From Anolis carolinensis (lineage: Eukaryota): a DNA stretch of 64,000 nt. The position numbers and the translations under genes are program-made. The notes beneath the pieces are model-generated. The model was not told the DNA's origin and searched no databases. It saw only the letters and a program-made list of their open reading frames with translations. The stretch is taken from assembly GCF_035594765.1 (NCBI RefSeq), contig NC_085844.1, forward strand, positions 236,918,107 to 236,982,106. Direction: 5' to 3'. Below are positions 14,027 to 45,544 of the stretch, piece after piece (the first letter of the stretch is position 1; each line of letters begins with the position of its first letter).

Positions 14027-16131
14027 TCAAGGTATGATGGGGTCTCCATAACTGCAGTCTTCTTCCACACCCAAGTTGAAGTTATTGCCTTTTCCATTTT
14101 TATATGCACTCGTCACAATTCTAAACCAGCCGCGTTCCCCCTGCAAGATATTAATTGGTAAAAGCATATTGGAAGGAGCTCAAGTAGAAGCAACTTGTTA
14201 TGACACTTCTTTAAAAATTCTTGTGTACGAAAAGGTAATTGAATTAAAAACATTTGTGCATCAAGAAGTAATTGTACTGTTCTGGGTTTTTCCTGAAGGA
14301 TGCAGGTGGTTAGGGTGTGATTTTTGGGTGTTTATGGGTAGACACAGAACTACATAGTACGACAGCTGATTAGTGAGAGGCATGAGGGCAGTGAACCAAT
14401 ATCCCATCATTCCCATGTATCTGGTGGAATATTCCACTGCTAGAACAGCAGCTCTCTGTTGGGCTATTTGTTTGGAGGCCAGACATGCTTCCTAAGAGAT
14501 TTAGACAAGGGGTAACCAATTTTCTGGTGGTGCTTCATGTCATGGCCAGCAGTTAGTCTGGCTTGATTTGGCTGCTGCTTGGTGCTTGGAAGGAGTTAAT
14601 CTGATTCAGCTTGTGGAAGGGGTCAAGATGACCTTTCCCTTTGAGGAATGCATCACAGGCCTCTGTGATGATCTGAACTGGCTTGAATAAATGAGTAGAA
14701 ATCTCTGGTTAAATAAAGGGTCTGTAAGAGACAGCTGTTTGGTAACAGATGGCATAGTACCTTCGTATCTTGGACCTTGGCTGTTACCCTGGTTTAGAAT
14801 GTCGGATCCTAACCTTGTTCCTGCAACTCCACTGCTCTTGTAAACTTGTCTTGGATCTTAACATTTGAATCTTGGTCAACCTTCTTGGATTTAACATATG
14901 GACTTGGACATTGCTTTGACCCTTAACCATCTGGCTCAACTTCAGAACTCTGAGTACGGTTTGCAATCTTGAATCTTGAACTTTTGGCATCTGACTTTTG
15001 GACTGCAAACTTGGCTAGTCTTGCTCCTGAACTGGCTTCGTAGTATTCTCAGCCTTAATTTGACTTTTGACTTTGATTTGTGCAACCCTAGCTGTGTGCT
15101 GTATTTCTGTTTTCACTAGCCAGACCGTTGAAAGACTTAAGACTTTTGTTCTCAATTTAAGTAAGTCTGGCTTTGGCTCATCCTGTGTTCGATAAAACTC
15201 TGCTAGGGTCATTGCCAACCTATGAAATGCCAATGTGAGTAGATCAATAGGTACCGGTCCGGCGGGAAGGTAACGGCGCTCCATGCAGTCATGCCAGCCA
15301 CATGACCTTGGAGGAGTCTACGGACAATGCCGGCTCTTAGTCTTAGAAATGGAGATGAGCACCAACCCCCGGAGTCAGACATGACTGGACTTAACGTCAG
15401 GGGAAACCTTTACCTTTACTTCCCTAGGGTCATTGGGTAAGAGCTACCTGGAACATGACAGTTTCCCTAGAAATATGGTGGTAAGCAGGGTATGTTTTGG
15501 TGTGTTTTAAGATGTGAGCCTCCCTTTATGACCAAGCTTTATACATCCATGAATAAACTACATATCAACAGTCTCCAAGGACCTTTTCCCAAAGAAACAA
15601 AACCCCAGGAAGCAGTTGCACCAGTGAAATTTGCATTGTTCAGAAATCTGGAATGCAAAAGTGCATAAAAACATGGACCACTTCTTGCAATGATAGGTAA
15701 GTTTCCATTGGTGTTTAGCAACTGGTCCTGGGATCCTTCACATTAGTGATCAACAAAGGTGTGTCGCATGTCCTTTCTCACAGGTTATAACCTAATCTCA
15801 TCCAGTGATGCACTGAGGACTTGTCAATGAATGTCCTTATTTTGATTTCAACCTCTTTACTGCTACTGTAACATGTGGGAGTGGAGTGGGGAATTGCATA
15901 TGGCTTCATGGCCTCAAATCATATCAAGCTAGTCCAGTCATCAAAGGCTTCACATTCTGCATACTAACATAATTTGTACAAATGCTTTCAGTCACTGGAA
16001 TGATTCTGCAAAGTGTGATATTTGATTTTTTGAATATTAAATATTGCTAAAAGGCTTCTTATGTTGATCAGGTCCCCATGTATCTGCACCGAGTTCCTTT
16101 GGGGAGATGCAGGCAGGATACAAAACTAAAG

Positions 16132-16202
<71 letters not shown>

Positions 16203-19200
16203 TCTGGGAAGAACAAATCATAATGAAGTAAACCCCCCATAGTTTATTTCTCTGAACCAGAAATGCACAATTTACAGTTTGGAGTCAGTATGACTCTCCT
16301 CATATTCTAGGGTTCTTTCACACTATCCTACAGTGTTATTTTCCACTTTAATAGCCCTGGCAATATCCTAAGTCTATATGTGTCCATACATTTACATGCA
16401 TGACAGATGTCATTTTGGACTCAGCCATCTCTATCCATGCTGCGCAAGACTGAAAAGGTTATGCCTCCCTCTTGCATCCCCTTTGATGGAATCGTGTTCA
16501 TCTTATTCACACCCATCATAGACTCCATTCAACCAACTAAATCCTTAAAGAGCCACACACTCATCTCATTTGTGTTTCCATTGCCTATCTTACCCAGGGC
16601 TCTCCCCAAGAGTTGCGGACAATCCAGTATTCGATTCCGTTTTCTACTCCCCAGCCAGAAACGCTGACAACGTGGTTTGCCATTGCTGTCTCATTGTATT
16701 CAGTAAAAATGCCTCCTGTGTATTCATCCAGCTTTGGAGTCTGCATAATTGAACAGCTGTTTAAAAACAACAAAATGCAATTTTAAAGATGCTGCTGAGA
16801 TTAAATGTATGCTCTAGTGCCGCCGAAATAAAGAATCATATCTTGATGATCTCATAACATTGAAATTCATGGTAAGAAATATAATCTTACAGGCTTGTAA
16901 CCACACTCCAAGGCCATGTAACAAAGCCCCCCATTAACCTGAAGATGGTGCCAGAAAGTGGCACTACCTTCAGGTTAAGGAGCCCCTGATGGCACAGCGG
17001 GTTAAACCGCTGAGCTGCTGAACTTGCTGACTGAAAGGTCGGTGGTTCAAATCCGGGGAGCAGGGTGAGCTCCCACTATTAGCCTCAGTTTCTGCCAACC
17101 TAGCAATTTGAAAACATGCAAATGTGAGTAGATCAATAGGTACTGCTTTGGTGGGAAGGTAACAGCGCTCCATGCAGTCATGCCAACCTTGAGGTGTCTG
17201 AGGACAATGCTGGCTCTTTGGCTTAGAAATGGAGATAAGCACCAACCCCCAGAGTTGGACACAACTAGACTTAATTTTGTGCCACAAAATAGCATGTATA
17301 CTACCATCACTGATTCCTCATCTTCATAAAAGAAAGCAATAATTTTGGTTCAGCCTGTTTTAATTTCTTTCTGTAGTGGGATTCACCACTCACTAGAAGA
17401 AATGAAATGGAAGAAATGAACTATTAGCCAATCTTCTTCTGCTCGAGACATGAAACAAATTCAGACTCATTCAATCAACAGAGTGAAGAGTCTGAAACAG
17501 TGGTGTCACCACAGCATGTAAACAATACAAACCCTCAGTGGAGGTTACACCAAAATGACTTGCCTATAGAAAAAACTGCTCTGCAGAAAGTTACTGTCAT
17601 TTTTTAAAAAAAATACCTCTGTAGTTAGATATAACTATAAAAATGTTTTCATAACCCAGCTTTATTACTCTATGCTAATTTCCTTTTTGATACCTTCTAA
17701 TAATTTGTAGGCACTCCATTCAGAATTGTCATTATTACCAATGACAATGATGGTGTGAGTCAAATAGTTTCATCTGTGCATGCTGGTTTTTCATAATTGT
17801 TGTTTTTGTCAATTTATGATACATTAGTTACAGTATTGTGGAGTAGTCTGGTCTGGTATGTTACTTGTACTGAAATTATAGTGCGTCTTACAATCAATTG
17901 TGTCTCAAAATTGAAGAAATATGGTATTATCTAGTCACAAGATCTGCATCCTGTCAGATCCCTAAAATCTGAAGGAAAGCAAGAGTCATAGCCATTTTGA
18001 AACGAGGCAGACCATAACAATCAATAAAACTATAGACCAATGTTCTTGTTGAGCCATCTTTTTAAAGCTCTGGAGAGACTTATCCTGCCCAGAATTGTGA
18101 AAAAAAATAGATCAATTTATGATCCCAGAGCAAGCTAGTCTGAGGAAAGGGAAAAGCTGCACATCACAAGTGCTGGACCTGACTCAGATGGTTTTGAAAG
18201 ACAGCAGATTACAGGAGCTGTCTTCATAGACCTGTCAGCAGCTTATGCTACTGTCAAAAAATGTATACAGTACTATCACAAAGGATTATCACCTCACCTG
18301 CTTCATAGGAAATCTGCTACAAAACAGAAGTTTTTTTGTTGAGTTCCAGGGCCAGAGAAGCAGATGGCAGAAATAGAAGAGTGTGCTTGCTCCATAAATG
18401 TTTAATATTTACAGAAATGACCAGCCACTGCCAGAAGGGACAGAGAGTTTCATCTATGTTGACGATTGTGCCATCACAACCCAAGCAGGGAGCTTTGAAA
18501 TGGTTAAACAGAAGCTCTCTGAAGCTTTAGGTGCTCTTACTAACTAATACAGGGAAAACCAGCTGATTCCTAATCTATCTAAAATGCAGACGTGGCTTTT
18601 CATCTTAAGAACAGACATGAATTTTGAGGATTACCTGGGAAGAAATCCCACTGGAGCATTGCAGCACACCAAAATACCTGGGAGTTATTCTGGACCATGC
18701 TATGACTTACAAGAAGCACTGCTTGAATATCAAGCAAAAAGTGAATGCTATAAATAATATCATATGAAAGCTGACTGGCACAACCTGCGGATCACAACCA
18801 GACACAGTGAAGACATTTGCCCTTGCGCTTTGCTACTCTGCTACTGAATATATATGCCCAGTGTGGAATACATCTCACCACATTAAAACAGTGGATGTGG
18901 CTCTTAATGAGATATGCCGCATTATCACAGGATGTTTACGCCCTACACCACTGAAGAATTAGCCAGTACTGCAACACCTGACATCCGTTGGGAAGTAGCA
19001 GCCTGTAATGAAAGGACCAAGGCATTGACATATCTGGCCGATTCTCTGTTCGGATTTCAGTCAGCAAGCAAATGTCTTAAATCAAGAAATAACTTCATAA
19101 GATTGTAGAGATACTCACAGGAACACCTCAGCAAGAGAGAGTCCAAAAGTGGCAGGTTAAAATCTGGAACTATAATCAGTGCCTGATTCCAGATGAGAAA

Positions 19201-22200
19201 CTCCCGCCTGGGCACACAGAATGCTGGGCAACATGCAAGGCGCTGAACAGACTGCGCTCTGGCACCACCAGATGCAGAGCTAACCTTAGGAAATGGGGCT
19301 ACAAAGTGGAGTCCACAACATGTGAGTGTGGAGAAGAGCAAACCACAGACCACTTACTACTCTGCAGTCTGAGCCCTGCCACATGCACAATGGACCTGCC
19401 ACATACACCTTCTAACAATGACACCAGAGGCACTCGAAGTGGCCGGCTTCTGGTCAAAGGAAATTTAGTACAATGCCAAGCTTTTAACTTTGTTTGTGTT
19501 TTTTGTACGCATTATAACTGTATTCTCAATTTGTTTCTGACACGATAAATAAATAAAACCTAGTCACTGTCTATAAAGGCTTCATTTCCTTACCTGATTG
19601 GTCCATTTGCATAGATTTCTCTCATCATATCTTCTCGCCCACTGATATATTCATAATCTCCCACTTTCCAACGGGTGTAGTTCTTTACCACATAACATTT
19701 GTTGAAGATAACACAGGTCCCACATTTAGTAAACTTCTTGCACTCTGCAAAAAGGTTGGTAAGAGAAAGCTTTGACTGACGTGAAAAGTTGCCTTTCATC
19801 TAGTAACAAAAAAGAGTGAAATAAAATTCTGCAATGCCTTCCTGTCATCTGGATTTAATCCTTTTTTATTTCTTTATTTATTCATAGAGATACCTAAGCA
19901 CCCTCCTATTCAATTCATACAGGAATCGGGCCACAGGTACTAGAGAGAAAAGGAAGAGGCAGAATCTTGCCCTTCCCTGTATTCTACCAGCAAACTACTT
20001 TTCCATTTTGAATTCAATTTGCAGCAAATGAAGTAAACCAAGAAGAAAGTGAAATGGCAGACAAAGGTTTGAGATAATGAGACAAAGAGAGTTCCGGTTG
20101 CTGTAGAAAAAGACGTTTATTCTCAGTGGCCAGAGAGAATAAGCAATAGGAAGGACCTTCTCCTGTAATCAGGAAAGCAAAGGTACAGAACAAAGAAACA
20201 CAGGTTCTTATATACCTTTTTTGCCTCCATCTACCTACGTCATATAGGCATTATCCATCACCAATTAGTGTCAAAAAAGTCTTATTTTGCACTTTACTAA
20301 AAGCTACTTTTGCATTTTCCTAAAATATAGACTACTTTCAAGACCTCTGACCCTCCATTAGGCCTTATCTAAGGAATTCCTATCTAAGCTTTCTGAGGTT
20401 CCCATTAATTGAAGAATTCCCCCTTATCCTAGCTTTTAGGGAGTCATTAGCACTCCTACATGGCGCCAGGTCTTATCTTGACATCCCAAAAGCCTTAATT
20501 TGTCTTTTGTCCATTATCTTATCTATTCTTGTTGACACTTGACATATGTCTCTGGCACTTAAGGTGAACTTTGGTCTCTGCTTATAGGGAGACGGTTATT
20601 TGCTAGGCAGCGTGTATTTTGGGGCTATATGCACACAATCTGCTTGTGATTACATATTTTCCTATTCCTATTTCTAATATGATTGCATTCAATATGTAGT
20701 TTCCAATGCAAGTATTATATTCTCCCAATACACCTTCATCAAAAGGAGGGAAATAAAAGGCGAAAAGGAAAAACTCAAAGATTTGAAAAGCATCTGAAAA
20801 AGCAGCCATAATCGGGGCTACAGAGTCAGACCCTTGACCTCTTCCAGGTGGAAATGCCAGGCACCTTTCCTGTGTTTGCCAGACACATAATGTTTGCAAA
20901 TTCCAACATGCATTCTCTGTATTATGCTGTACTTCTCTGTTTTAATTATTTGTGATTTAAACAATTCTGACTAGCAAACAGAATTTATAATAGAGTAGAA
21001 AAATAAAACAGAAATCCATGTCTTACTTTGATCCTTAGCTACATAATTGCTGCATGTCTCATCCGGGATGCCATGGCGATGGGCATATCTCCACACGAGC
21101 ATCTCGTTTCCACCCTTGCAAGACCCACCACGAGAACAATCCACAACATGCTGAACTGAGAGAAAAGCAGAAGGCCAGGCCCCTTTTCTCTTGATGTTGA
21201 TGCGGTCTGAGAAATGGAGGCAAACAACAGTTGATTAAAGGCATGAACAGAAATTTCCAATATTCTGCAGTTTGTGTAATATCTTACAGTTCTAATAGAA
21301 TGAGTGGAACATGCACCTCTTTCAAACCATACCCTTGCCTAGAACACTCTATTCTACACTATCCAATTTTCTCATTTTCAATGGTTTGAGGATATTATTT
21401 GTTTTCAACTGACAATTTGATAGCCCATCTATCCCCAGTTTTCCTCTAAGGTTTGTTTGTTTCCCTCTGAAACTTCTTCAAGCTTCCTTGTAGGGCACTG
21501 GAAGTCACATAAGGCTACACAGAGCTCTGCACTCAGATAATTGATTTCAATTACATAAGATGGAAATGTTGGGATTTGCCCTGTTTAAGGGACTCCCCCC
21601 GCCCCCCAGTGATGCAAGGTCTTTGCTAGGAGCAACATTCACTTTGCTAATTCCTCTAACAATCAGGAATACCATTCCCACAAATATCAGTGAATGAGGC
21701 AAAGTGTCGGCAGGATGAAAGTCTCACCTGGAACCACTCTGAGTGTGACCTCTGTGCACCTTTGTGTGTATGTCATCTCAGCAGTGAAAAGAAAAATACA
21801 TTTGCATCCCTGTCAAGTGGCTGTGGAACCACATGGAATGGTAAGGCTATGGTTTCAAGGTGGGGGGTAAATAGAAGGGAATTGTTGGAATGTGTCTCCG
21901 TCAACAACATAAAACTGAGGAATGAATCAAGCTGATGTCCAGAAGCAGATGAGCCCCCTTCCTCTTTTCCAACTACCACTGTCTTTGTCTTGGAGGGAGA
22001 GAAGAAGAGGCAGTATCTGCTGGACTTCATGCTGTCCCGCACAGCCGTCTGCTTTTTCTCTGTGTCATGTCTTAATTAGACTGTAAGGCTGAGGCGGGAT
22101 GCCCAGAGCAACATTTACTCCATAAATTTCCCCCTGCAGTATATTCCTGTTACAAAGATGCACACCTTTAGAGGGTTTGCAATTTATTTGTTCTAGACCT

Positions 22201-23487
22201 TCGTCTGTTCATTTTTCTTCAAACCTGCATCCTGATGCTCCTAAAATAGCTTTTTGAAATGGTTAATGGTTCTCTGGAGACATCTGGGACATCATTGTGG
22301 TTGGGAGAATGGGTCACATTAAGGAATACATGCGCCTTACAGATACACTTGGTCTACTGCTGCTCCATGGGAGCTGGGAACAAGGGAGCTGATAATCACA
22401 ATAGGAAAATGACAGGCACATACCGGCCAGGGCGCTGGTGGCAGCATGAGCCCAGCAAGACCCACAGAACTGTGGGACACCCTGGTTGCGAGTAGGACTT
22501 GCGTAATTGACGCCGTTCACATTTCGCCAGTCCCACTTCTTGGGGATTTCTGACATGTTCAGGTATTCATGTGGACGAGAGTAAGTTCTGTGATGCGAGA
22601 AACAGGATGGAGAACGTAAGACTTTTTCTATAGTCAGGCAAGGATCATAGCATTTCCTCCTCCATCTTAAGAAGTGGAATAAATTAGAATCATATTCAAA
22701 TTAGAATCATAGAGCGAGAAGTGATTCCAAGAGCCATCCAGCCCACCACTGTTCTGTTATGCAGGAATACACAACCAAGCCACGTCTGACAGATGGCCAT
22801 CCAGCCTCCGTTTAAAAGCTCCCAAATAAGGAAATTCGACTTCACTCTGAGTTAACTGTTATTGTCAACTTAACAGCAGGTAACAACAACTAAGCCACTG
22901 GTGGAGCCCTCAGTGGTGTAGTGGATTAAAGCCTTGTAACTTGAAGGTTGGGTTGCTGACCTGAAGCTGCCAGGTTCGAATCCCATCCGGGGAGAGCGCA
23001 GATGAGCTCCCTCTATAAGCTCCAGCTCCATGTGGGGACATGAGAGAAGCCTCCCACAAGGATGGTAAAAACATCAAAACATCCGGGCATCCCCTGGGCA
23101 ACGTCCTTGCAGACAGCCAGTTCTCTCATACCAGAAGCGACTGACACGAATAAAAAAGTCACTGGCTAGGCAAACTGTACCTAGCAAAATGCTCTCTTCT
23201 CCCCAAATATCAAAGATAAAAGAGGCTTTTCTTTCCTCATCAGTGCACTCTGTGTGGCAGAGCAGGTTGCCAGATGTAAGATCTAGGCTGGACTATAGGG
23301 ATAAGGAGGAGCAGGGTTACCTGGGATTGTCACCTTACCTGACTCCTTGAATCCTGTGTGGCATTGGTTTGTAGCAACTTTCCCCTTCCTTGAAATGGAC
23401 AGTAGCAGCTGATACAGGAGAATGGCAGACATAGGCACACAGCAGTAGCGCCAGGATAAAGAAGGGCAAGTGGGCATTTACGGGCAT
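14027..23487 (-). CDS. Cathepsin Z-like paralogue A (306 aa, intact); exons 23487-23339, 22587-22424, 21206-21027, 19744-19594, 16756-16594, 14140-14027
   Basis: GCCATG start; signal peptide [20 protein letters not shown]...; pro-peptide SCYKP; [14 protein letters not shown]; ANHVV; RNSWGEPW; ends YGDPIIP*. Exon sizes 149/164/180/151/163/114 total 921 nt. All introns GT-AG, no stops or frameshifts. Confidence 0.93.
14538..15460. mobile_element. Probable solo LTR (Gypsy-like) in intron 5 of A, with a nested Sauria SINE fragment (~15215-15423); homologue at ~39357-40536 in C
   Basis: TGTCATG...CATGACA inverted termini and ggact-rich body. The nested SINE has TSD ctagggtcattg. No clean TSD for the LTR itself. 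Confidence 0.5.
16131..16203. repeat. (GTT)n(ATT)n microsatellite
   Basis: Directly visible. Confidence 0.95.
16979..17275 (+). mobile_element. Sauria SINE
   Basis: ggagcccct..gttaaaccgctgagctgctgaacttg..catgcaaatgtgagtagatcaatagg consensus. Confidence 0.8.
17939..19559 (+). mobile_element. 5'-truncated Vingi/Ingi-type LINE in intron 4 of paralogue A
   Basis: Decayed RT-like coding sequence, C-terminal [11 protein letters not shown] motif, 3' end ctgacacgataaataaata, and 8-bp TSD ctagtcac (17931-17938, 19560-19567). Family name assigned from recall. Confidence 0.75.
20050..20741 (-). mobile_element. Solo LTR (692 bp) in intron 3 of paralogue A
   Basis: TG...CA termini and 4-bp TSD aaag. 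Minus-strand TATATAA (20214-20208) then AATAAA (20121-20116); CCAAT at 20261. Absent from the homologous site in C (about 43620-43635). Confidence 0.75.
22903..23155 (+). mobile_element. AnolisSINE2-type SINE in intron 1 of A (absent in B and C)
   Basis: A and B boxes, 3' ctgacacg end, and flanking cactgg duplication. Confidence 0.8.
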
Positions 23488-27446: not shown

Positions 27447-27487
27447 CCTGACGTTTCGCCCACATCTATGGCAGGCATCCTCAGAGG
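27447..27487 (-). ncRNA. Minimal type I hammerhead ribozyme motif (Penelope-associated), same strand as paralogue B
   Basis: Reverse complement of 28442-28482. Confidence 0.75.
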
Positions 27488-28441
27488 TTGTGAGGTATGG
27501 ATAAACTAAGTCAGGAAAGGAAAGAATATATATCTGTGTAGAGTCCAAGGTGTGGCAAGAGTTCTTTGTCACTGGGAGCCAGCATTAATGTTTCAGTTAA
27601 TCACCCTAATTGGCACTGGAAATGTTTTGTCCCTTGCCTGGGGGCATCCTTTGTTCAGTCAAGTCCTCATTGTGTTGGTTCCCATCTACTGTTTTGATTT
27701 TGGAGTTTTGTAATACTGGTAGCCAGATTTTGTTCATTTTCATGGTTTCTTCCTTTCTGTTGAAGTTGTCCACATGCTTGTGGATTTCAATGGCTTCTCT
27801 GTGTAGTCTGACATGATAGTTGTTAGAATGGTCCAGCATTTTTGTGTTCTCAAATAGTATTCTGTGTCCAGGCTGGTTCATCAAATGCTCTGCTATGGCT
27901 GATTTCTCTGGTTGAATTAGTCTGCAGTGCCTTTCATGTTCTTTGACTCTGAGTCAAAGAACATGAAAGGCACTGCAGACTAATTCAACCAGAGAAATCA
28001 GCCATAGCAGAGCATTTGATGAACCAGCCTGGACACAGAATACTATTTGAGAACACAAAAATGCTGGACCATTCTAACAACTATCATGTCAGACTACACA
28101 GAGAAGCCATTGAAATCCACAAGCATGTGGACAACTTCAACAGAAAGGAAGAAACCATGAAAATGAACAAAATCTGGCTACCAGTATTACAAAACTCAAA
28201 AATCAGAACAGTAAATAAAAAGCAATACTCTGAAAACAGAGGGTTTCCAGACATGAATCAACCAAGGGCAGTTAACGACTCTAAACAAAGGATGCCCCAG
28301 AGGCAGGAAGAAGACAGCAGATAAGCTTTTCAATGCTAATTTAAGTGATTAACTACACTACATTCATACTGACCTCTCTCACCCTAGACTTTCCACAGAT
28401 ATATATTAACCTCTTTGCTTAGTTTTCTCCATACCTCACAA

Positions 28442-28482
28442 CCTCTGAGGATGCCTGCCATAGATGTGGGCGAAACGTCAGG
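28442..28482 (+). ncRNA. Minimal type I hammerhead ribozyme motif (Penelope-associated)
   Basis: cct-CTGAGGA-t-gcctgc-loop-gtgggc-GAAA-cg-TC-agg. Core boxes present, stem I cct/agg, stem II gcctgc/gtgggc, palindromic ACGT stem III. Confidence 0.75.
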
Positions 28483-28592
28483 AGAGAATGCTTCTGGAAC
28501 ATGGCCACACAGCCCGAAAGACATACAACAACCCAACATTCTGTTGGATTTCTTTCAGAAGACATGCATGCAAAGACAGCTCAAATGCAGGA

Positions 28593-31085: not shown

Positions 31086-31136
<51 letters not shown>

Positions 31137-34100
31137 AATAATGGTGTGATTCAAATAGTTTCACTTGTACATGCTGATTTTTCATGATTGTTGATTTTGT
31201 CAAATTATGATATATTAGTTACAGTATTGTGGAGTAGTCTGGTCTGGTATGTTACTGGTGCTGAGTGCGTCTTACAATCAGTGATATCTCAGAATGGAAG
31301 AAATATGGTATTTTCTAGTCGCAAGATCTGCATCCTGTCAGATCCCTAAAATCTGAAGGAAAGCAGGAGTCATAACCATTTTGAAACCAGACAAAAACTG
31401 TAACAATCCACAAACCTATAGACCAATCTTGTTGTGCCATCTTTATAAATTTCTGAAGAGACTTATGCTGCACAGAATTATGGAAAAAAATAGGCCCATT
31501 TATTATCCCATAGCAAGCTAGATTGAGGAAAGGGAAAATCTGCACATAACAAATGCTGAAGCTGATTCAGCACATGGAAGATGGTTTCGAAAGGTCAGAG
31601 AAGCAGATGGCGAAAACAGAAGATCGGCCTATCTCAGGGAAGCGTGTTTGCTCCATCAATTTTTAACATTTACACAAGTGATCAGCCACTGCCAGAAGGG
31701 ACAGAGAGTTTCATCTATGCTGACAACCATGCCATCACCGCTCATCAATGGCTGATACCCGATGAGAAACTCACCCCTTGGCACACGCAATACTGGGCGA
31801 CGTAGAAAGCACTGCACAAACTGCTCTCTGGCACCACGAAGAAATGGGGCTACAAAGTGGAGTCCACAACATGTGAGTGTGGAGAAGAGCAAACCACAGA
31901 CCACCTATTACAATGCAGTCTGAGCCCTGCCACATGCACAATGGAGGATCTTCTAACAATGACACCAGAGGCACTCTGAGTGGCCAGCTTCTGGTCAAAG
32001 GAAATTTAGAACAATGCCAAGCTTTTAAGTTTGTGTTTTTTGTATGCATTATAACTTTATTCTCAATTCCTTTCTGACACAATAAATAAATAAAACCTAG
32101 TCACTGTCTATAAAGGCTTCATTTCCTTACCTGACTGGTCCATTTGCATAGATTTCTCTCATCATATCTTCTCGCCCGCTGATAAATCCAAAATCTCCCA
32201 CTTTCCAGAGGGTGTAGTTCTTTACCACATAACATTTGTCGAAAATAACACATGTCCCACACTTTGTAAACTTCTTGCACTCTGCAAAAGTGTTGGTAAG
32301 AGAAAGCTTTGACTGGCGTGGAAAGTTGCCTTTCATTCAATAACCAAAAAGAGTGAAATGAAATTCTGCAATGGTTTCCTTTCATCTGGATGACCCTTTT
32401 TACTTATTTATTTGGGGTTGTTGTATGTCTTTCGGGCTGTGTGGCCATGTTCCAGGAGTATTCTCTCCTGACGTTTCATCCACATCTATGGCAGGCATCC
32501 TCAGAGGTTGTGAGGATGCCTGCCATAGATGTGGGTGAAACGTCAGGAGAGAATACTTCTGGAACATGGCCACACAGCCCGAAAGACATACAACAAGCCT
32601 GTGATCCCGGCCATGAAAGCCTTCGACAACATACTTATTTATTTATTCATAGAGCTACCTAAGCAGCCTACTATTCAACTCATAGGAATCGGGCCATGAG
32701 CATTAGAGAGCAAAGGAAGAGGCAGAATCTTGCATTAGAAAAACCAGCCTTTCAAAGGGTTAATCGGGGCTACAGAGTCAGGCCCTGGACCTCTTCCAGG
32801 TGGAAATGCCAGGCACCTTTCCTGTGTTTGCCAGGCCCAGAATGTTTGCAAATTTCAACATGCATTCTCTGTATTATGCTGTACTGTTCTGTTTTAATTA
32901 TTTGTGATTTAAACAATTCTGTCAAGCAAACAGAATTTATGATAGAGTAGAAAAATAAAACAGAAATTCTGGTCTTACTTTGATCCTTAGCTACATAATT
33001 GCTGCATGTCTCATCCGGGATGCCATGGCGATAGGCATATAACCACAAAAATATATCATTTCCACCCTTGCAAGACCCAGCACCAGAACAATCCACAACA
33101 TGCTGAACTGAGAGAAAAGCAGAGGGCCAGGCCCCTTTTCTCTTGATGTTGATGCGGTCTGAGAAGTGGAGGCAAAGAACAGTTGGTTAAAGGCACAAAT
33201 AGAAACTTCCAGTATTCTGCAGTATATATAATATTTTACAGTTCTAATAGAATGAGTGGAATTTGCATCTCTATCAAGCCATGTCCTTGCCTTGAACACT
33301 CTATTCTACACACACTATCCAATTTTCTCATTTTCAATTGTTTGAGGATATTATTTGTTTTACATTGACAATCTGATAGCTTGCCTATCCCCAGTTTTCC
33401 TCTAAGGTTTGTTTGTCTCACTCTGAAACTTCTTCAAGCTTGCTGAGAAATGATTTCAGTGACATAAGATGGTAATGTTGGGATTTGCCCTGTTAAGGGA
33501 TGCTCCCCAGTCATGCAAATTTTTGCTAGGAGCAACATTCACTTTGCTAATTCCTCTAACAATCAGGAATACAATTCCCACAAATAACAGTGAATGAGGC
33601 AAAGTGTCGGCAGGATGAAAGTCTCACCTGGACCTCTCTGAGTGTGACCTCTGTGCGCCTTTGTGTGTATCTGATCTCAGCAGTGAGAAGAAAAATATGT
33701 TTGCACCCAAGTTTCAATTGATGCTAATATGTATTGCCCATCATATTCCCTTTCAAGTGGCTGGGGAACCACATGGAATGGTAAGGCTATGGTTTCAAGG
33801 TGGGCGTAAATAGAAGGGAATTGTTGGTTTGTGTCTCCATCAACAGCATAAAACCGAGGAATTAATCAAGCTGATGTCCAGAAGCAGATGAAGCCCCTTC
33901 CTTTATTCCAATATCCACTACATTTGTCTTGGAGGAACGAGGCAGTATCCACTGGACTTCATGCCATCCTACATAGCCGTCCAATTTTTCTCTGTGTCAT
34001 GTCTTAATTAGATTGTAAGGCTGAGGCGGGATGCCTAGAGCAACATTTACTCCATAAATTTCCCCCTGTAGTATATTCCTGTTACAGAGATGCACAACTT

Positions 34101-34984
34101 CAAAGTGTTTGGAAGTTATTTGTTCTAGACCCTCATCTGTTCATTTTTTTTTCAAACTTGCATCCTGATGCTCCTAAAATAGCCTTTTGAAATGGTTAAT
34201 GGTTCTCTGGAGACATCTAAGACATCATTGTGGTTGTTTTGATGAAGACATTTTGGTATGGGAGAATGGGTCACATTAAGGGATACATGCGTCTTTCAAA
34301 TGCACTTGATCGACTGCTGCTCCATTGGAACTGGGGATAAGGACAGGGTGATAAACACAAGACAAGAACAGCCACATACCGGCCAGGGCGCTGGTGGTGC
34401 CGTGAGCCCAGCAAGATCCACAGAACTGTGGGACGCCCTGGTTGCGAGTAGGACTTGCGTAATTGACACCGTTCACATTTCGCCAGTCCCACCTCTTGGG
34501 GATTTCTGACATCTTCAGGTATTCATGTGGACGAGGGTAAGTTCTTTGATGCAAGAAACAGGATGGAGACTGTTATAAAAGCTCCCAAATAAGGAGATTC
34601 AACTTCACTCCGAGTTAACTGTTACTGTCAACTTAACAGCAGCTAATGACAACAAAGCCACTGGTGGGCAAATTGTACCTAGGAAATGCTCTCTTCTACC
34701 CAAATATCAAAGAAAAAAAAGGCTTTTCTTTCCTCATGAGTGCACTCTGTGGGGCAGAGCAGGTTGCCAGATGTAAGATCTAGGCTGGGCTATAGGGACA
34801 TGGGGGAGTAGGGTTACCTGGGATTGTCACCTTACCTGACTCCTTGAATCCTGTGTGGCATTGGCTTGTAGCAACTTTCCCCTTCCTTGAAGTGGACAGT
34901 GGCAGCTGATGCAGGAGAATGGCAGACATAGGCACACAGCAGAAGTGCCAGGATGAAGAAAGGCAGGTGGGCATTTACGGACAT
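28593..34984 (-). CDS. Cathepsin Z-like paralogue B (306 aa, intact); exons 34984-34836, 34543-34380, 33158-32979, 32281-32131, 29933-29771, 28706-28593
   Basis: Same exon sizes and phases as [11 protein letters not shown]...SCYKP; [17 protein letters not shown]; [11 protein letters not shown]; ANHLV; RNSW; [12 protein letters not shown]. The exon 2 acceptor is AAG instead of CAG. Confidence 0.92.
29987..30450 (-). mobile_element. tRNA-headed, L2-tailed SINE in intron 4 of B (second copy ~48649-49092 -)
   Basis: Two near-identical dispersed copies; L2-type stem-loop tail with (taaa)n; TSD agattaaat. Confidence 0.7.
31087..31134. repeat. (ATT)n microsatellite
   Basis: Directly visible. Confidence 0.95.
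31323..32096 (+). mobile_element. Internally deleted copy of the same Vingi-type insertion in paralogue B
   Basis: Same ends and TSD (ctagtcgc/ctagtcac). The empty site is at 43142-43149 in copy C. Confidence 0.75.
32414..32632. mobile_element. Short palindromic Penelope-like remnant in intron 3 of paralogue B; minus-strand hammerhead motif at 32467-32507
   Basis: Two inverted copies of the same terminal sequence as in 27359-28533. Confidence 0.8.
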
Positions 34985-36969
34985 GGGTCCCAGGTCTTGT
35001 GACAGTCCCAGCAAAAGTAGGATGCACACAGCTCCAACAGACCTACAAGAAAAAAGATATCTCCATAGATTTCAGCTATAATAATATTACAATAAGAAAT
35101 TCTTAAAGCAGGAACTATGCTCCTACCTTTCGTTGTCGTTTCCCTTGCTCTGGCTACTATGAAATGCAGCTGGCCAGATAGTTCTTTCCTTTATTATATT
35201 GTCCAGCCTGCCAGTGAAGTCAAAGATGGAATTGCATTGTTGCAGTACCTCAGCAGCTGTTTTATAGGTTTCCATCCCTCCTATCTCAGCTTCAGTATCT
35301 GCACTGATTGACATTTGCACTGATATGTTCAACTGCCGAAATACTCCCATAGCCTTTCAACAGTAAACTATGAACTACACACAAGAATGTTCTTCTTATT
35401 TTTCACTGTGTTCCGGCATATGTTTAGCTAGCCTTTTTCTGTTGGTTTTCTCGGATGTGGTGTGTTGCCTTCATTCATGTTAACTGGCATTCATGACTGC
35501 CATGATTTCCAACTTGTCTTCCAGTTGCTGCCATTGTTTCCAGAGGGCAAATTCATAATCTATTTGCCCACTATTATGCCCTTATAAACATGGCCCATTG
35601 ACTATTAGAATAGTACTTTCTTAAAATCGTAATGTGATTTTAGTTGCACATGACTTTTTATCTCATCATTAACATCTGAAAAGATTGACATCTGAACTGA
35701 CAGCCACATGCTTTCCAACTGGCAAAATAAATGCTCTCTTTTTCTTATTTTCAATAGCTATCCCTAGAAGTGTTTTCCTAGTCTCCTTTTCTAACTACAT
35801 TTATATATATGCATAACCCATGAGTCTGGTAACCTGTTTATTCTAAAGTGCTTAAAGCAAGAGGTTCTGCTTTCAAGGAACTTTGTGTCTTTCTGCCTTT
35901 GATTGTATTTCCACAAAACACTGAAAATATTTAAAACTGCTGGGTGGAGGAGCACCCTATTAATTACTAAAAAAGCATCTGATTTTCAAAAGGTATTGCA
36001 GCCATCATCTTCACATCTCTGTCTAACCCAGAATTGGAAAACTACGGCCTTTCAAATGTACTCTTTTCTCTGTACTCATACACACACATGCATGTATATC
36101 TTTTTTGATAGACACACACGTACAGTATATCTTTTTTGTTTGCAGCTCATTATATGCCATCAAAGGCTTAATCCTTTTCACTTGCTGCTTCTTGTGAAAC
36201 TCTTTTGAGATGGACGACTTTCAACATGTCAAGGAGCAGGTGATGAAAAAGCAACATTTTGTGTTTTTGTGAAACTTAACCTTTCTCCCTTTTCACTTCT
36301 GCTTCATGAAAGTGAAATGGATACCATGGCTTTTTCTAATGAACCTTAGGAATTGGAACTCTGTTACACTGTTCGGATACTTTCTCCACCTTTAGAATTC
36401 CAATTCCATATTAAACTGGATTGTAACTGGATATCTATTTGGTATACTTTGATTTTGCTTTTCCTGCATGGCATGAGGTTAGACTGGATGGCTCTCATGG
36501 CCTCTTCCAACCAGTGATTTGAAGATTCCTATTGGCCATACTGGCTGGGATTGCCCCTCACCACAGCCATCTTGCTTGAATTGCCCAATCAACTCTTGCA
36601 AGGTACCCAACACAAGACTACTGATGTGAGATTTGCCTGGGATGCGGGTTTATGAAATTATTTTATAAATACAGTATATAGGATTGCCAGATCTCAATAA
36701 TCTAATTTCAGGGAATCAGAGTTTTTGCCAGTAACAATGGGTGCCTTCCATGTCTCCTGTGACTGAGTACAGCTTTAATAGAACGATCCAAAGTGCTTAT
36801 TCCAATTTCTAAAAGAGGTTCAGAAATCTGGATCCACTGCCTTTCTGATATGGAAGCTATCAGTTACTACTGTAAGGTATATTTGGAAAGTTTTACTTCA
36901 CCATCAAAGCACTCTCAACAGATGGCCATCCTATCTCTATTCAAAATTCTCCAAGAAAGATGATACTAT

Positions 36970-37860: not shown

Positions 37861-37990
37861 NNNNNNNNNNNNNNNNNNNNNNNNNNNNNNNNNNNNNNNN
37901 NNNNNNNNNNNNNNNNNNNNNNNNNNNNNNNNNNNNNNNNNNNNNNNNNNNNNNNNNNNNNNNNNNNNNNNNNNNNNNNNNNNNNNNNNN
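37861..37990. other. Assembly gap (130 N)
   Basis: Run of n. Confidence 1.
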
Positions 37991-37999
37991 TATGACACA

Positions 38000-38356: not shown

Positions 38357-38358
38357 GG

Positions 38359-38446
<88 letters not shown>

Positions 38447-38985: not shown

Positions 38986-41900
38986 TCAAGGTATGATGGG
39001 GTCTCCATAACTGCAGTCTTCTTCCACACCCAAGTTGAAGTTATTGCCTTTTCCATTTTTATATGCACTCGTCACAATTCTAAACCAGCCGCGTTCCCCC
39101 TGCAAGATATTAATTAGTAAAGAAGTATTGGAAGGAGCCCAAGCTGAAGCAATTTTTTATGATCCTACTTTACAAATGCTTGTGCACCAAGAGTTAATTG
39201 GGTTATTCCTCTGGTTGCGGTGGGATATTTAGGTGTTCATGGTTGGATACAGAACAACATAGTATGACAGTTGATCAGTGAGAGCCACAAGGGTAGGCTA
39301 AGCATCCTTCCTAAAAGATTTAGACTAGGGATAACCAGTTTTCTGGTGGTGATTTATGTCACGGCCAGAAGTTAGTCTGGCTTGGCTGCTGCTGGGTGCT
39401 TGGAAAGAGTTAATCTGATTCAGCTTCTTGGGTCAAGATTACTTTTCCTTTTAAGGAATGCATCAGAGGCTTCTGTGATGATCTGTACAGGCTTGAATAA
39501 ATGAATAGCAACAAGAATCTCAGGATAAATAATGGGTCTGGAAGAGACAGCTGTTTGGTAACAGGTGACATAGTACCTTCGTAATTGTATCATAGACTTT
39601 GGCTGTTGTAGGAGCTGTGGTGGCGCGATGGGCTAAACCTTTTTCTGCTGAACGGCTGACCTGAAGGGTGAACTCCGTTTGTCAGATACAGTCCCTGTCA
39701 ACCTAGCAGTTTGAAAACATGTAATGTGAGTAGATAAATAGGCACCACTTCAGTGGGAAAAGGGCAAGGAGATGTTCAAAGCAATATTTCCAGCAACACA
39801 ATCAGGAGATGACAACACAGGCTCCTCAGCTTGAAAAATGGAGGAGAGCACCTCTGCAGAACCAGAGATGACGCACTGCCTCCAGAAGCCGGAAATGAAA
39901 AGGAGAAGCCCCTGCCTTTGTTGTGTTTGTGTGTCTCATTTGTATATGATTGTAATGGCATTGGATGTATGTAAATGCTGTAATCCATTCTGAGTCCCCT
40001 AGGGGAGAAGGGCAGAATATAAATAAAGTATGTTGTTGTTGTTGTTACCCTGGTTTAGAATGTTGGATCCTAACCTTGTTCCTTCAACTCCCTTTTGGAC
40101 TCCACCGCTTTTAAAAACTTGTCTTGTTGTTCCCTGAACCCTGGCATCTTGGTTGACCTTCTTGGATTTGACATATGGACTTGGACTTTTCTTTTACCCT
40201 TGACTATTTGACTCAACTTTGGAACTCTGAGTACGGTTTGCATTCTTGAACTCTGGAACACTATCCGAAGTGAACTCTCGCAACCTGACTTTTGGACTGC
40301 AGACTTAGCTACTGTTTGTTCTTGCTCCTGAACCGCCTCTATAGTATTTTCAGCCTTTGATCATGATTTGTGTAACCCTGGCTGTGTGCTGTATTTCGGT
40401 TTTGTCTGGTCAGATCCTTGAAAGACTTAAGGCTTTTGTTCTCAGTTTAAAGAAGTCTGGCCTTGGATCATTCTGTGTGTGTGTGTTTCTTTAATATATA
40501 AAACTCTGCCAGGGTTAGAGCTGCCCAGAACATGAGTTTCCCTTGAAATCTGATGGTAAGCATGGTATGTTTTGGTAAGTCTCAATTTATGATCAAGCTG
40601 CTTACATCCATGAATATAGTACATATCAAAGGTCTCTAAGGATCTTATTCCAAAGAAACAAAACCCCAGGAAACACTTGCACTGATGAAGTTTGCATTCT
40701 TCAGAAATCTGGAATGCAAAAGTGCATAAAAACATGGGCCACTTCTTGAAATTATAGATAAGTTTCCATTGGTGTTTAGCTACCACAGAACTGGTCCTGA
40801 GATCCTTCACATGAAGTGATCAATGAAGGTGTGACCAATGTCCTTTCTCACAGGTTGTAGCCCACAAGTATCTAAGCAAAATCTCACCCAGTGATGCAGT
40901 GAGGACTTGCCAATGAATGTCCTTATTTTGATTTCAACCTCTTTATAGTTGCTGTGACATGTGGTAGTGGAAAGGGGAATCACATATGGCCTCGTGGCCT
41001 CAAATCATATCAAGCTAGACTTGTCAGCTAATACTTCACATTCTGCATACTAACATAAAGATTACCATTTGTACAAAATCTTTCAGACATTGGAATGATT
41101 CAGCACAGTGTGATATCTAATCTTATGAATATTAAATGTAGCTATATGGATTATCAGAAGCACAAATGATAATTAAGTAAACCCCCCATAGTTTATTTCT
41201 CTGCACCACAAATGCACAATCTACAGCCTGGGGTCAGTAACTCTCCTCATGTTCTATGGTCCTTTCACACTATCCTATAGTTTTATGTTCTATTTTAATA
41301 GCCCTGGTAACAACCTAAGTCTATATGTGTCCATACATTTACTTGACAGCTGTAATTTTGGACCCAGCCATCCCCAGCCTACACTGCTCAGGACTAAAAA
41401 GGGTCTACCTGCCTCTTGCATCCCCTTTGATAGTATAATGTTCATCATCTTCACACCCACCATGGACTTTATTCATCCAACTCAAGCCTTTAAAGAGCCA
41501 CACACTCATCTCAATTTTGCTTCCTCTGCCTGTCTTACCCAGGGCTCGCCCCAAGAGTTGCGGACAATCCAATATTCGATTCCGTTTTCTACTCCCCAGC
41601 CAGAAACACTGACAACGTGGTTTGCCATTGCTGTCTCATTGTATTCAGTAAAAATGCCTCCTGTGTATTCATCCAGCTTTGGAGTCTGCATAATTGTACA
41701 GCTGTTTAAAAACAACAACAAAACACCAGTTTAAAGATGCCACTGAGATTAAATGTATACTCTACACCAGTGGTTCCCAACCTTTTTTTTGACCAGGGAC
41801 CACTTTGACCAGGGACCACTCTCCAACATTAGTATCAAAAGGATTACAAATCAGTTTTTGGTCAACTTTAGATTCAGCTTGGTTATCTGGGATGCCGATT

Positions 41901-44900
41901 CAGAAAATTGCACTGAATAGACCACATCAACTCTAGTGTCTATCCAGTTGCTGCCATCTGCTCGCCCACTAAAAACCATATTTAATAATCTAGAGCTGAT
42001 GTGGTCAATTCAATGCAATTTCTGAATCAGCACCCAAAGAATCCCAGGAACAGGCCTAAAAATGAAGACACCAAGGTGTCTTTGCTTCCAGGTGCCTCAT
42101 GGAATGGCTCCACTCAGGGGGAGGGTGGAGGAGGAGAAGCAGCAGTCAGGAGGCTTATTGTCACACCTTTCGTGGGTTGTCTACCTCTCCCCTCCCGACA
42201 TCCTCCTCATGGCCTTGGCACTATAAGAGGGTGGTGCACGACCAGCTGCTCTCGTTGCAACGGTGTAGCAATGGTGAGGCCACGGAACATATTTTAGTTC
42301 TTGGAGACCTCTGGTGGTTCATGGACCACAGGTTGGAAACCACTGCTCTAGACACTGCTGTTGAAATAAAGGGTCATATCCTGATGATCTCAGAACACTG
42401 AAACCCATGATAAGAAAAAAAATCTAACAGGCTCACAACCACACTCCAAGGCCGTGTAACAAAGCTCTTCCATTAACCTGAAGGTAGTGCCACAAAATAT
42501 CATGTCAACTACCACCACTGATTCCTCATCCTCATAAAATAAATCAGTGAGGTAGTTCAGCTTGTTTTAACTCCTTTTGTAGTTGGATTCACCACTCACT
42601 AGAAGAAATGAAATGGAAGGAATGAACTGTTCTATTAGCCAATCAACTTCTGCTCAAAGTCTGAAAGAAATAACATGAGCAAATAACAGAGCAAATAACA
42701 TGAAACAGTGGTATCATCACAGCATGTGGACAATACAATCTCCTCAGTAGAGGTTACACCAAAATGACTTGCCTATAAATATCAGTGAAGCAGAAATTTA
42801 CTATCATTTTTTAAAATACCTCTGCATTTAGATATAACCATGAAAATATTTTCATAACCCATTTTACCCTTTCATAACCCATCATAACCCTATGCTAATT
42901 TCTTTTTTGATACCTTCTAATAATTTGTAGTCACTCCATTCAGAACTGTCATTATTACCTAATGACAATGGTGGTGCAAGACAAATAGTTTCATCTGTAC
43001 ATGCTGGTTTTTCATAATTGTTGATTTTGTCAAATTATGATATATTAGTTGCAATATTGTGGAGTGGTATGTCTCCGGTACTGAAATTAGAGGTTGTCTT
43101 ATAATCAATGGTGTTGCAGAATTGAAGAAATATGGTATTATCTAGTCACTGTCTATAAAGACTTCATTTCTTTACCTGATTGGTCCATTTGCATAGATTT
43201 CTCTCATCATATCTTCTCGCCCTCTGATAGATCCATAATCTCCCACTTTCCAGAGGGTATAGTTCTTTACTACATAACATTTGTCGAAAATAACACATGT
43301 CCCACACTGTGTAAACTCCTTGCACTCTGCAAAAATGTTAGTAAGAGAAAGCTTTGACTGACATGGACAGTTGCCTTTCATCCAGTAACAAAAAGAGTGC
43401 AATTAAATTCTCCAATGCCTTCCTGTCATCTGGATTTGATCATTTTTTACTTATATATTTATGTATAGAGCTACTTTAGCAGGCTCCTCTTCAACTCATA
43501 TAGCAAATGGGTCACAAGAATTAGAGAACAATGGAAGAGGCAGAATCCTGCCCTTCTCTGTTTTCTACCAGTAATTTTCTTTTCCATTTTGAACTCCATT
43601 CGCAGCAAATGAAGTTAACCAAGAATAAAGGAGGGAAATGAGAGATGGAAAGGAAAAACTAGAAGATTTCTAAAGTATCTGAAAAGGCAGCCAGTCAAAG
43701 GATAAATCGAGGCAACAGAGTCAGGCCCTGGACCTCTTCCAGAAGGAAATGCCAGTCACCTTTCCTGTGTTTGCCAGGCGCAGAATGTTTGCAAATTCCA
43801 ATGTGCATTCTCTGAATACTGTACTTTTCTGTTTTATTTGTGAGTTAAACAATTCTGACTAGCAAACAGAATTTACGATAGAGTAGAAAAATAAAAGAAA
43901 TCCAGGACTTACCTTGATCCTCAGCTACATAATTGCTGCATGTCTCATCCGGGATGCCATGGTTATGGGCATAAAACCACACGTAATAATCATATCCACC
44001 CTTGCAAGACCCAGCACCAGAACAATCCACAACATGCTGAACAGAGAGAAAAGCAGAGGGCCAGGCCCCTTTTCTCTTGATGTTGATGCGGTCTGAGAAG
44101 TGGAGGCAAACAACAGTTGGTTAAAGGCACAAATAGAAACTTCCAATATTCTGCAGATTGTATAATATCTTACAGTTCTAATACAACGAGTGGAATTTGC
44201 ATCTCTATCAAGCCATGCCCTTGCCTAGAACACACTATACAAAATTCTCATTTTGGTTTGAGAATATTATTTGTTTTCCACTGACAATGTGATAGCCTGC
44301 CTATCCCCAGTTTTCCTCTAAGGTTTGTTTGTCTTCCTCTGAAACTTCTTCAAGTTTGCTGATATCTCCTTGTAGGGTACTCGAAGTCATAGAAGGCTAC
44401 ACAGAGATCTGCACTCAGAGAAATTATTTCAGTGACACAAGATAGTAATGTTGGGATTTGCCCTGTTAAGGGATACCCTCAGTGATGCTAGGAGCAACAT
44501 TCACTTTGCTAATTCCGCTGACAATCAGGAATACCATTCCCACAAATATCAGCGAATGAGGCAAAGTGTTGGCATGATAAAAGTCTCACCTGGAACCAAT
44601 CTGAGTGTGACCTCTGGGCACCTTTGTGTGCATCTGATCTCGTCACCGAAAGCCAGGACACGAAACAGATCAAGGTTTGCCCTGAATGCACATGACTACT
44701 TTGAGTCTCCTTCAGGCTGAGAAAGGTGGGGTATAAATCAAGTAAATAAATAACAGGCACATACCGGCCAGGGCGCTGGTGGTGCCGTGAGCCCAGCAAG
44801 ATCCACAGAACTGTGGGACGCCCTGGTTGCGAGTAGGACTTGCGTAATTGACGCCATTCACGTTTCGCCAGTCCCACCTCTTGGGGATTTCTGACATCTT

Positions 44901-45544
44901 CAGGTATTCATGTGGACGAGGGTAAGTTCTGTGATGTAAGAAACAGGATGGAGACTGTTAGAAATTTTCTAAAGTCAGACAAGAGTCATAGCATTTCCTT
45001 CTCCATCTTAAGAAGTGGAAGCCAGAAATAAATTAGAATCATAGAGCTTGAAATGATCCCAAGAGCCATCCAGTCCAACACTGTTCTGCCATGCAGGAAT
45101 ACGCAACCAAGCCATGTCTGACAGATGGCCATCCAGCCTCTGCGTAAAAACTTCCAAGTAAGGAGATTCAACTTCACTCCGAGTTAACTGTTACTGTGAA
45201 CTTAACAGCAACAAAGCCACTGGTGGGCAAACTGTACCTAGCAAAATGCTCTCTTCTACCCAAATATCAAAGATAAAAGAGGCTTTTCCCCCCTCTTCCG
45301 TACACTCTGTGTGGCAGAGCAGGTTGCCAGATGTAAGATCTAGGCTGGACTATAGGGATAAGGAGGAGCAGGGTTACCTGGGATTGTCACCTTACCTGAC
45401 TCCTTGAATCCTGTGTGGCATTGGTTTGTAGCAACTTTCCCCTTCCTTGAAATGGACAGTAGCAGCTGATACAGGAGAATGGCAGACATAGGCACACAGC
45501 AGTAGCGCCAGGATAAAGAAGGGCAAGTGGGCATTTACGGGCAT
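38986..45544 (-). CDS. Cathepsin Z-like paralogue C (306 aa, intact; alternative in-frame ATG at 45553); exons 45544-45396, 44928-44765, 44092-43913, 43326-43176, 41701-41539, 39099-38986
   Basis: Same exon sizes and phases. [17 protein letters not shown]; [11 protein letters not shown]; ANHVV; RNSW; [12 protein letters not shown]. All introns GT-AG. Confidence 0.93.
41768..42345. mobile_element. Non-autonomous hAT element in intron 4 of C
   Basis: TIR cagtggtt(c/t)ccaacct and 8-bp TSD ctctacac/ctctagac. Confidence 0.8.

What the first reader, a model, noticed from the sequence alone, without database searches (positions are those of the whole stretch)
14027..45544. Array of three intact cathepsin Z paralogues that have lost the carboxypeptidase mini-loop (HIPQY to GVPQF)
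Seen: the canonical copy encodes [12 protein letters not shown] (2592-2606). A, B and C all encode [12 protein letters not shown] (22481-22467, 34437-34423, 44822-44808). All three keep the oxyanion Gln, catalytic Cys/His/Asn, the structural Cys residues, the pro-peptide Cys (SCYKP), a signal peptide and full reading frames. Established: CTSZ is single-copy in human, and the His23-Tyr27 mini-loop of cathepsin X binds the substrate C-terminal carboxylate, making it a carboxypeptidase. Inference: the paralogues are active papain-family proteases with changed specificity, possibly endopeptidases, forming a lineage-specific subfamily beside the conserved housekeeping copy. I do not know of a description of this but cannot search.
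Basis: partly seen in the sequence, partly recalled or inferred. Interest (0 to 1): 0.9.

Follow-up and report, generated by a model that had tools for sequence, protein, structure and literature searches.

The report
Histidine-less cathepsin Z paralogues in lizards
The green anole has three intact extra copies of the protease cathepsin Z, part of an old lizard-only branch that lost the single histidine thought to confine this enzyme to trimming protein ends, so they probably cut different targets, though this has not been assayed.

Summary
Observation largely confirmed; the title overstates it. The window is the Anolis carolinensis CTSZ-TUBB1 locus. A, B and C are intact six-exon genes (306 aa, GT-AG, full catalytic set), and B is spliced as modelled in one RNA-like contig. 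The gap is intergenic. The mini-loop is not lost: it keeps its length and aligns gaplessly to cathepsin X. What is lost is His23 (to Gly), described as binding the substrate carboxylate, plus the Tyr27 hydroxyl in anoles only. His23 occurs in 380 of 400 homologous motifs collected. The His-less genes form one clade (100/99) across anoles, Phrynosoma, Sceloporus, Varanus and Elgaria, under purifying selection (dN/dS mostly 0.15-0.34), so the change predates Anolis. Among A/B/C, 5 of 6 S2-pocket residues differ versus 10% elsewhere (p about 1e-4), pointing to specificity diversification. The 'single housekeeping copy' is wrong: this species has three His-keeping paralogues. Best reading: active cathepsin-X-fold proteases without strict carboxypeptidase anchoring, probably relaxed towards blocked-end or endopeptidase substrates; not assayed. 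No paper or earlier scan finding describes it.

The parts
2486..9014 (+). His23-keeping CTSZ paralogue ('Z', GGDD type); exons 2486-2649, 5053-5232, 6123-6273, 6598-6760, 8901-9014; first coding exon lies left of the window
   Evidence: identical to P0291 over 256/256
2592..2606 (+). canonical mini-loop His23-Tyr27 (HIPQY)
14027..23487 (-). paralogue A; coding exons 23487-23339, 22587-22424, 21206-21027, 19744-19594, 16756-16594, 14140-14027
   Evidence: 306/306 to P0278/P0282
22467..22481 (-). A loop GVPQF (Gly at the His23 site); catalytic Cys codon 22457-22455; catalytic His 16674-16672; Asn 16614-16612
28593..34984 (-). paralogue B; coding exons 34984-34836, 34543-34380, 33158-32979, 32281-32131, 29933-29771, 28706-28593
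   Evidence: 306/306 to P0277; spliced contig over exons 1-5
34423..34437 (-). B loop GVPQF; catalytic Cys codon 34413-34411; His 29851-29849; Asn 29791-29789
34985..35044 (-). 5' UTR part of B's first coding exon, with a pyrimidine-rich AG acceptor at 35044-35043 (same acceptor in A at 23547-23546 and C at 45604-45603); implies an unplaced upstream leader exon
   Evidence: contig covers up to 35040 and has 95 further letters off the stretch
37861..37990 (.). assembly gap, intergenic between C and B, among repeat-like sequence; not filled
38986..45544 (-). paralogue C; coding exons 45544-45396, 44928-44765, 44092-43913, 43326-43176, 41701-41539, 39099-38986
   Evidence: 306/306 to P0279
44808..44822 (-). 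C loop GVPQF; catalytic Cys codon 44798-44796; His 41619-41617; Asn 41559-41557
51750..58390 (+). beta-tubulin gene (TUBB1-like), head to head with C; synteny marker of the vertebrate CTSZ locus
   Evidence: same arrangement in A. sagrei and Rhineura

Best explanation
A, B and C are functional members of an old lizard-specific cathepsin X subfamily. It arose once by tandem duplication in the already expanded squamate CTSZ cluster, no later than the iguanian-anguimorph ancestor, and lost His23. SHOWN: intact genes, spliced RNA for B, single origin, purifying selection, S2-pocket diversification among the anole copies. INFERRED: they are made as signal-peptide zymogens locked by the pro-peptide Cys-Cys31 disulfide, as in procathepsin X, and activated in endolysosomes or after secretion. 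INFERRED: with Gly at 23 the imidazole that fills S2' and holds the C-terminal carboxylate is gone, so S2' is permanently open and uncharged. Carboxy-monopeptidase efficiency should fall, and substrates with blocked or extended C-termini (weak to moderate endopeptidase or peptidyl-dipeptidase cuts) become acceptable. The three anole copies differ mainly in P2/P3 preference, and gene conversion homogenises the rest of the scaffold.
For: His23 occupies S2' and binds the substrate carboxylate (PMC9712828; PMC13637667). His is at this site in 380/400 motifs collected; all 14 Gly cases belong to this clade. Gly after the oxyanion Gln is also the residue in cathepsin B and, from own knowledge, papain and cathepsins L/K. 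One clade at 100/99 with loop columns removed. dN/dS 0.15-0.34 in all but one pair within the clade versus 0.06-0.12 for His-keeping pairs. 5/6 S2 sites vary in both the A. carolinensis and the A. sagrei trio (p 1e-4, 3.5e-4) but 0-2/6 in five orthologue control sets. Mature 66-87: pN 0.18-0.28 vs pS 0.08-0.12; rest of the mature enzyme pN about 0.02. Spliced 921-nt contig of B with 2 differing letters. Analogy: fluke cathepsin B paralogues lacking an occluding-loop His lose exopeptidase activity (PMC8698070, PMC7054455).
Against: No activity data. The Ile/Val24-Pro25-Gln26 wall, credited with steric restriction, is intact. No His23 mutant of cathepsin X was found in the searchable papers. The AlphaFold model has pLDDT below 50 at the loop. 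Only B, in 1 of 4 runs, is shown spliced, and the tissue is unknown. The S2 excess also holds for the His-keeping trio, so pocket diversification is a feature of the whole cluster. The pN>pS figures rest on few sites and are not a formal positive-selection test.
Confidence: 0.6

Rival explanations
1. Still strict carboxypeptidases: the retained loop wall alone blocks the primed side, so H23G only changes P1' preference, pH profile or rate.
For: Loop length and Pro25/Gln26 are conserved. Reviews attribute the specificity to steric occlusion by the three-residue loop. Tyr27 is kept outside Anolis. In human cathepsin B, His111 is reported as not critical for exopeptidase activity.
Against: His23 is nearly invariant across eukaryotic cathepsin X, which implies its loss changes function. 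I found no obvious replacement basic residue among the clade's diagnostic changes. Sceloporus copies have drifted further in the loop (NNPWY, DTPLY).
Confidence: 0.2
2. Catalytically weak proteins kept for a binding role, for example as cystatin or inhibitor sinks, like inactive fluke cathepsin B paralogues.
For: His23 and Tyr27 are the side chains modelled to clash with stefin B, so their loss should ease cystatin binding; there is a fluke precedent.
Against: Gln22, Cys31, His180 and Asn200 are invariant across the full-length clade members, and change concentrates in S2, as expected for an enzyme tuning substrates.
Confidence: 0.1
3. Redundant copies in a duplication-prone cluster that drift under relaxed selection; H23G is a tolerated hypomorph with no new role.
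For: Higher dN/dS than His-keeping copies; gene-conversion mosaic; one Sceloporus copy has dN/dS 0.71 and Trp202Cys; not found in snakes, geckos, lacertids or agamids.
Against: Intact in six genomes of five genera separated by dS up to 0.8, with dN/dS 0.15-0.19 between deep members; three intact copies in both anoles; non-random placement of changes.
Confidence: 0.08
4. Assembly artefact: C (beyond the gap) is a haplotypic duplicate of A or B.
For: A gap separates C from B; A and C are identical over exon 1 and exon 6.
Against: C differs from A and B at 7-9% of residues and about 15% of intron letters. All three proteins are recorded on one 257-Mb contig. A. sagrei also has three copies and carries sequence similar to both sides of the gap in the same order.
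Confidence: 0.02

Closest known systems
Cathepsin X/Z (CTSZ; MEROPS C1A; PDB 1EF7, 1DEU)
   Same: Gapless alignment over the 242-residue mature enzyme, about 70% identity, TM-score 0.91-0.93 by target; short pro-peptide with Cys; 3-residue insertion before Cys31; TUBB1 synteny.
   Different: His23 to Gly (all), Tyr27 to Phe (anoles); S2 residues Gly154 to Ser/Thr and Ile178 to Ala; variable 75-78, 181, 234; Ala157 to Gln in anoles; multi-copy.
Fluke cathepsin B paralogues lacking occluding-loop histidines (Fasciola FhCB1-3, Trichobilharzia TrCB1.6)
   Same: Duplicated papain-fold exopeptidases that keep the loop but lose a carboxylate-anchoring His and diversify S2; shown there to lose exopeptidase activity.
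   Different: Different subfamily and loop; cathepsin B is already an endopeptidase, whereas cathepsin X is strict; vertebrate, not parasite.
Papain-like endopeptidases (cathepsins L, K, S, papain)
   Same: Gly directly after the oxyanion Gln (own knowledge; shown for cathepsin B).
   Different: They lack the 3-residue insertion that A/B/C keep, have long pro-peptides, and share only about 30% identity.

Membership tests
Papain family C1A, active | Peptidase_C1 domain with Gln/Cys/His/Asn catalytic set | tested here: met
   PF00112 at 162-167 bits vs cut-off 20.7; Q22, C31, H180, N200 present
Cathepsin X subfamily (by descent) | 3-residue insertion between Gln22 and Cys31 | tested here: met
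   gapless to 1EF7; 3-residue gap against cathepsins B and C
Cathepsin X subfamily (by descent) | short pro-peptide with Cys for the disulfide to the active-site Cys | tested here: met
   Cys38 aligned with the 1DEU pro-region; the disulfide itself was not observed
Cathepsin X subfamily (by descent) | nested among vertebrate CTSZ in a tree, at the CTSZ locus | tested here: met
   beta-tubulin neighbour
Cathepsin X carboxypeptidase (functional class) | His23 carboxylate anchor | tested here: not met
   Gly in A, B, C
Cathepsin X carboxypeptidase (functional class) | Tyr27 of the mini-loop | tested here: not met
   Phe in anoles; Tyr kept in Varanus, Elgaria, Phrynosoma, Sceloporus
Cathepsin X carboxypeptidase (functional class) | carboxy-monopeptidase activity with negligible endopeptidase activity | not testable with these tools
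   needs an enzyme assay
Papain-like endopeptidase (functional class) | open primed-side cleft | tested here: inconclusive
   His side chain gone but insertion kept; model pLDDT below 50 at residues 86-88
Toxicoferan venom or oral-gland protein | gland-specific expression or presence in secretion | not testable with these tools
   run tissue labels were not given; no paper links cathepsin Z to lizard venom

The most novel reading that the evidence does not exclude
This clade is a naturally evolved vertebrate endopeptidase built from the strict exopeptidase cathepsin X by a single side-chain loss. It has been kept since the iguanian-anguimorph split, was amplified in anoles into S2-specificity variants, and serves a specialised tissue (for example digestive, oral, skin-gland or immune), in effect a cathepsin type that mammals lack.
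Probability: 0.25. Interest if true: 0.75.

Novelty: new variant of a known kind. Interest (0 to 1): 0.52.

Why it matters
Cathepsin X is treated as a single-copy strict carboxypeptidase whose His23 is nearly invariant across eukaryotes. A long-lived, selected, natural His23Gly clade gives a direct test of whether the histidine or the loop wall enforces exopeptidase behaviour, a question I found addressed only by structure and modelling in the searchable papers. It also shows that lizards have a diversified cathepsin X family (six genes in this anole) hidden under uniform 'cathepsin Z(-like)' labels.

Tried and rejected
Loop deletion: rejected (gapless alignment). Pseudogenes: rejected. False duplication across the gap: rejected; the gap was not filled or looked up. 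Convergent His loss in iguanians and anguimorphs: disfavoured, since they form one clade with the loop columns dropped, share the GGC codon, and most non-anole members share a one-residue insertion before Gly73-Gly74; no AU test of the two-origin tree was run. Anolis-only novelty: rejected. The structure model did not resolve the loop. Paper searches found no description of lizard CTSZ duplicates; two primary cathepsin X papers are not held. Rfam: nothing. Copy-to-copy orthology with A. sagrei from introns was mixed. The leader exon could not be placed. One contig look-up (Vipera P0040) returned nothing.
Full report
Source and gene models. The window is from Anolis carolinensis: a database protein identical to B exons 1-3 carries that name. 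Six-frame scans and BLAST of the + strand copy's exons gave three further genes on the - strand. Each has six coding exons of identical lengths, GT-AG throughout, 921 nt and 306 aa with no internal stop. RefSeq proteins match A, B and C at 306/306 and are recorded on one 257-Mb contig. A beta-tubulin gene lies head to head with C, as with human CTSZ and TUBB1 (own knowledge), A. sagrei and Rhineura.

The gap. N at 37861-37990 is intergenic: about 1.0 kb past C's stop and 2.9 kb before B's ATG, so no coding frame depends on it. The join is supported indirectly: an A. sagrei locus has sequence similar to both flanks in the same order (these segments also recur in A's flanks, so this is consistent, not unique). 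C is too divergent to be a haplotype of A or B (91-93% aa, introns about 85%).

Method note. Searches used a single exon by reference or protein ids returned by the tools. Joined coding sequences were built only inside scripts, for alignment and dN/dS. Two human CTSZ database proteins appeared in hit lists (one was looked up before its identity was known); they were left out of all trees but were counted in the motif tallies.

What changed in the loop. The loop is not lost. C aligns without a gap to all 242 residues of mature human cathepsin X (1EF7) and still shows the three-residue insertion against cathepsins C and B. The changes are H23G, I24V and Y27F. Per PMC9712828, Ile24-Pro25-Gln26 form the S2' wall and the His23 ring fills S2' and binds the C-terminal carboxylate; rotating His23 opens S2'. 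PMC13637667 names His23 and Tyr27 as restricting S2'. So the anchor is gone and the wall remains. Among 400 motifs collected, 380 have His at this site. Of the other 20, all 14 Gly cases and two Sceloporus variants belong to one lizard group, and four are scattered hits from other organisms. The AlphaFold model matches 1DEU/1EF7 best (TM by target 0.91-0.93) but has pLDDT below 50 at the loop, so it cannot show pocket geometry.

Distribution and origin. His-less homologues occur in A. sagrei (three, GVPQF), Phrynosoma (GVPQY), Sceloporus (GVPQY, NNPWY, DTPLY), Varanus (GAPQY) and Elgaria (GVPQY). The eleven full-length ones form one branch at 100/99, also with the loop columns removed and with fish/frog outgroups. 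The His23 site is GGC in Varanus, Elgaria, Phrynosoma, one Sceloporus copy and A. sagrei. The change therefore dates at least to the iguanian-anguimorph ancestor, roughly 160 million years ago (own knowledge). Y27F is anole-specific. None was found in snakes, geckos, lacertids or agamids in three searches, but clusters hide members, so absence is not shown. His-keeping CTSZ is itself duplicated across squamates, lying in tandem next to NELFCD in a gecko, a viper and an agamid. A. carolinensis has three His-keeping genes, so six in all. In Varanus and Elgaria the His-less gene is co-oriented with a His-keeping one; in Anolis, Phrynosoma and Sceloporus the two are tail to tail, implying a local inversion (inference).

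Selection. dN/dS is 0.16-0.17 between Z and the paralogues and 0.29-0.43 among A/B/C. Across species within the clade it is 0.15-0.34, against 0.06-0.12 for His-keeping pairs; one Sceloporus copy gives 0.71. Of the six S2 positions (76, 154, 178, 181, 234, plus 75, which I added as the papain Tyr67 equivalent from own knowledge in place of invariant Gly74), five vary among A/B/C against about 10% of other sites (p about 1e-4). The same holds in the A. sagrei trio (p 3.5e-4) and in the His-keeping trio (p 0.002), but not in five orthologue sets (0-2 of 6). In mature residues 66-87 pN exceeds pS (0.18-0.28 vs 0.08-0.12), whereas pN is about 0.02 elsewhere; few sites, no formal test. Exon patterns are a mosaic (A=C over 251 nt at exon 1; B nearly equals C at exon 2), which indicates gene conversion. 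At pocket sites A resembles A. sagrei copy 012 and B resembles 011 although the tree groups the A. sagrei copies together. This suggests, without proving, that the trio predates the species split.

Expression. In run X11 one 921-nt contig lies on B in five pieces that match exons 1-5 at the predicted junctions, with two differing letters. Its remaining 95 letters imply an upstream leader exon, and a conserved acceptor precedes the ATG exon in all three copies. The listed pieces of the other three runs showed no spliced contig. Tissues were not given. Expression of A and C was not shown here.

Mechanism. Shown: intact catalytic machinery, retained pro-peptide Cys, lost anchor, diversified S2. 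Inferred: zymogen handling like procathepsin X; an open, uncharged S2'; reduced carboxy-monopeptidase efficiency and acceptance of blocked or longer C-terminal extensions (0.6). The nearest precedent is fluke cathepsin B paralogues that keep the occluding loop, lack one of its histidines and lose exopeptidase activity (PMC8698070, PMC7054455). Rivals: still strict carboxypeptidases because the wall remains (0.2), a binding or decoy role (0.1), relaxed redundancy (0.08), artefact (0.02).

Novelty. These are cathepsin X by descent but fail the His23 criterion of the carboxypeptidase class. Databases call them 'cathepsin Z(-like)'. No paper in the searchable library describes the expansion or the substitution (subscription journals are not covered), and the scan's earlier findings hold nothing on it. 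Verdict: new variant of a known kind, interest 0.52. It is real, old and testable, but rests on a point substitution whose functional effect is unmeasured.

Noticed in passing
window 27363-28534: A 1.2-kb element with long self-complementary arms begins about 60 nt after B's stop codon and interrupts the 3' region shared with A and C; B has no AATAAA within 1.5 kb of its stop. Rfam found nothing at gathering threshold. An earlier scan note describes a hairpin and hammerhead here.
   Followed up: partly
window 35044-35043, 23547-23546, 45604-45603 (-): Conserved splice acceptor about 57 nt upstream of the ATG in all three paralogues; RefSeq models of A and B instead extend the N-terminus (366 and 375 aa), which may be mis-starts.
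   Followed up: partly
L009:10001-20480 (Sceloporus) and P0169: Further-drifted His-less copies (NNPWY with Trp202Cys, dN/dS 0.71; DTPLY, truncated model), possibly decaying; L004:29662-29750 holds a degenerate extra exon-5 copy.
   Followed up: partly
L006, L007, L008: Agamid, viper and gecko each carry at least two tandem CTSZ genes next to NELFCD (His-keeping where the loop was seen; GGDH and GGDD types at residues 73-76): a squamate-wide CTSZ duplication that I did not find described.
   Followed up: partly
tree: Mammalian CTSZ (Asp76) falls weakly among the squamate GGDD-type copies, while bird, turtle and frog CTSZ have His76; an older amniote duplication cannot be excluded but support is low.
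   Followed up: no
window exon 5 of A, B, C (mature Asn173): All three paralogues gain an N-glycosylation sequon at mature 173 that Z lacks; Z has one at 191 instead. A and B have a net basic mature domain, C and Z a net acidic one.
   Followed up: no
P0057, P0077, P0112, P0140: Four divergent cathepsin-X-like proteins outside the lizard clade have Asp, Glu, Lys or Met at the His23 site (two looked up: unnamed, short contigs).
   Followed up: no
window 51750-58390: Beta-tubulin gene (TUBB1-like), last exon ORF 57365-58390 intact.
   Followed up: partly
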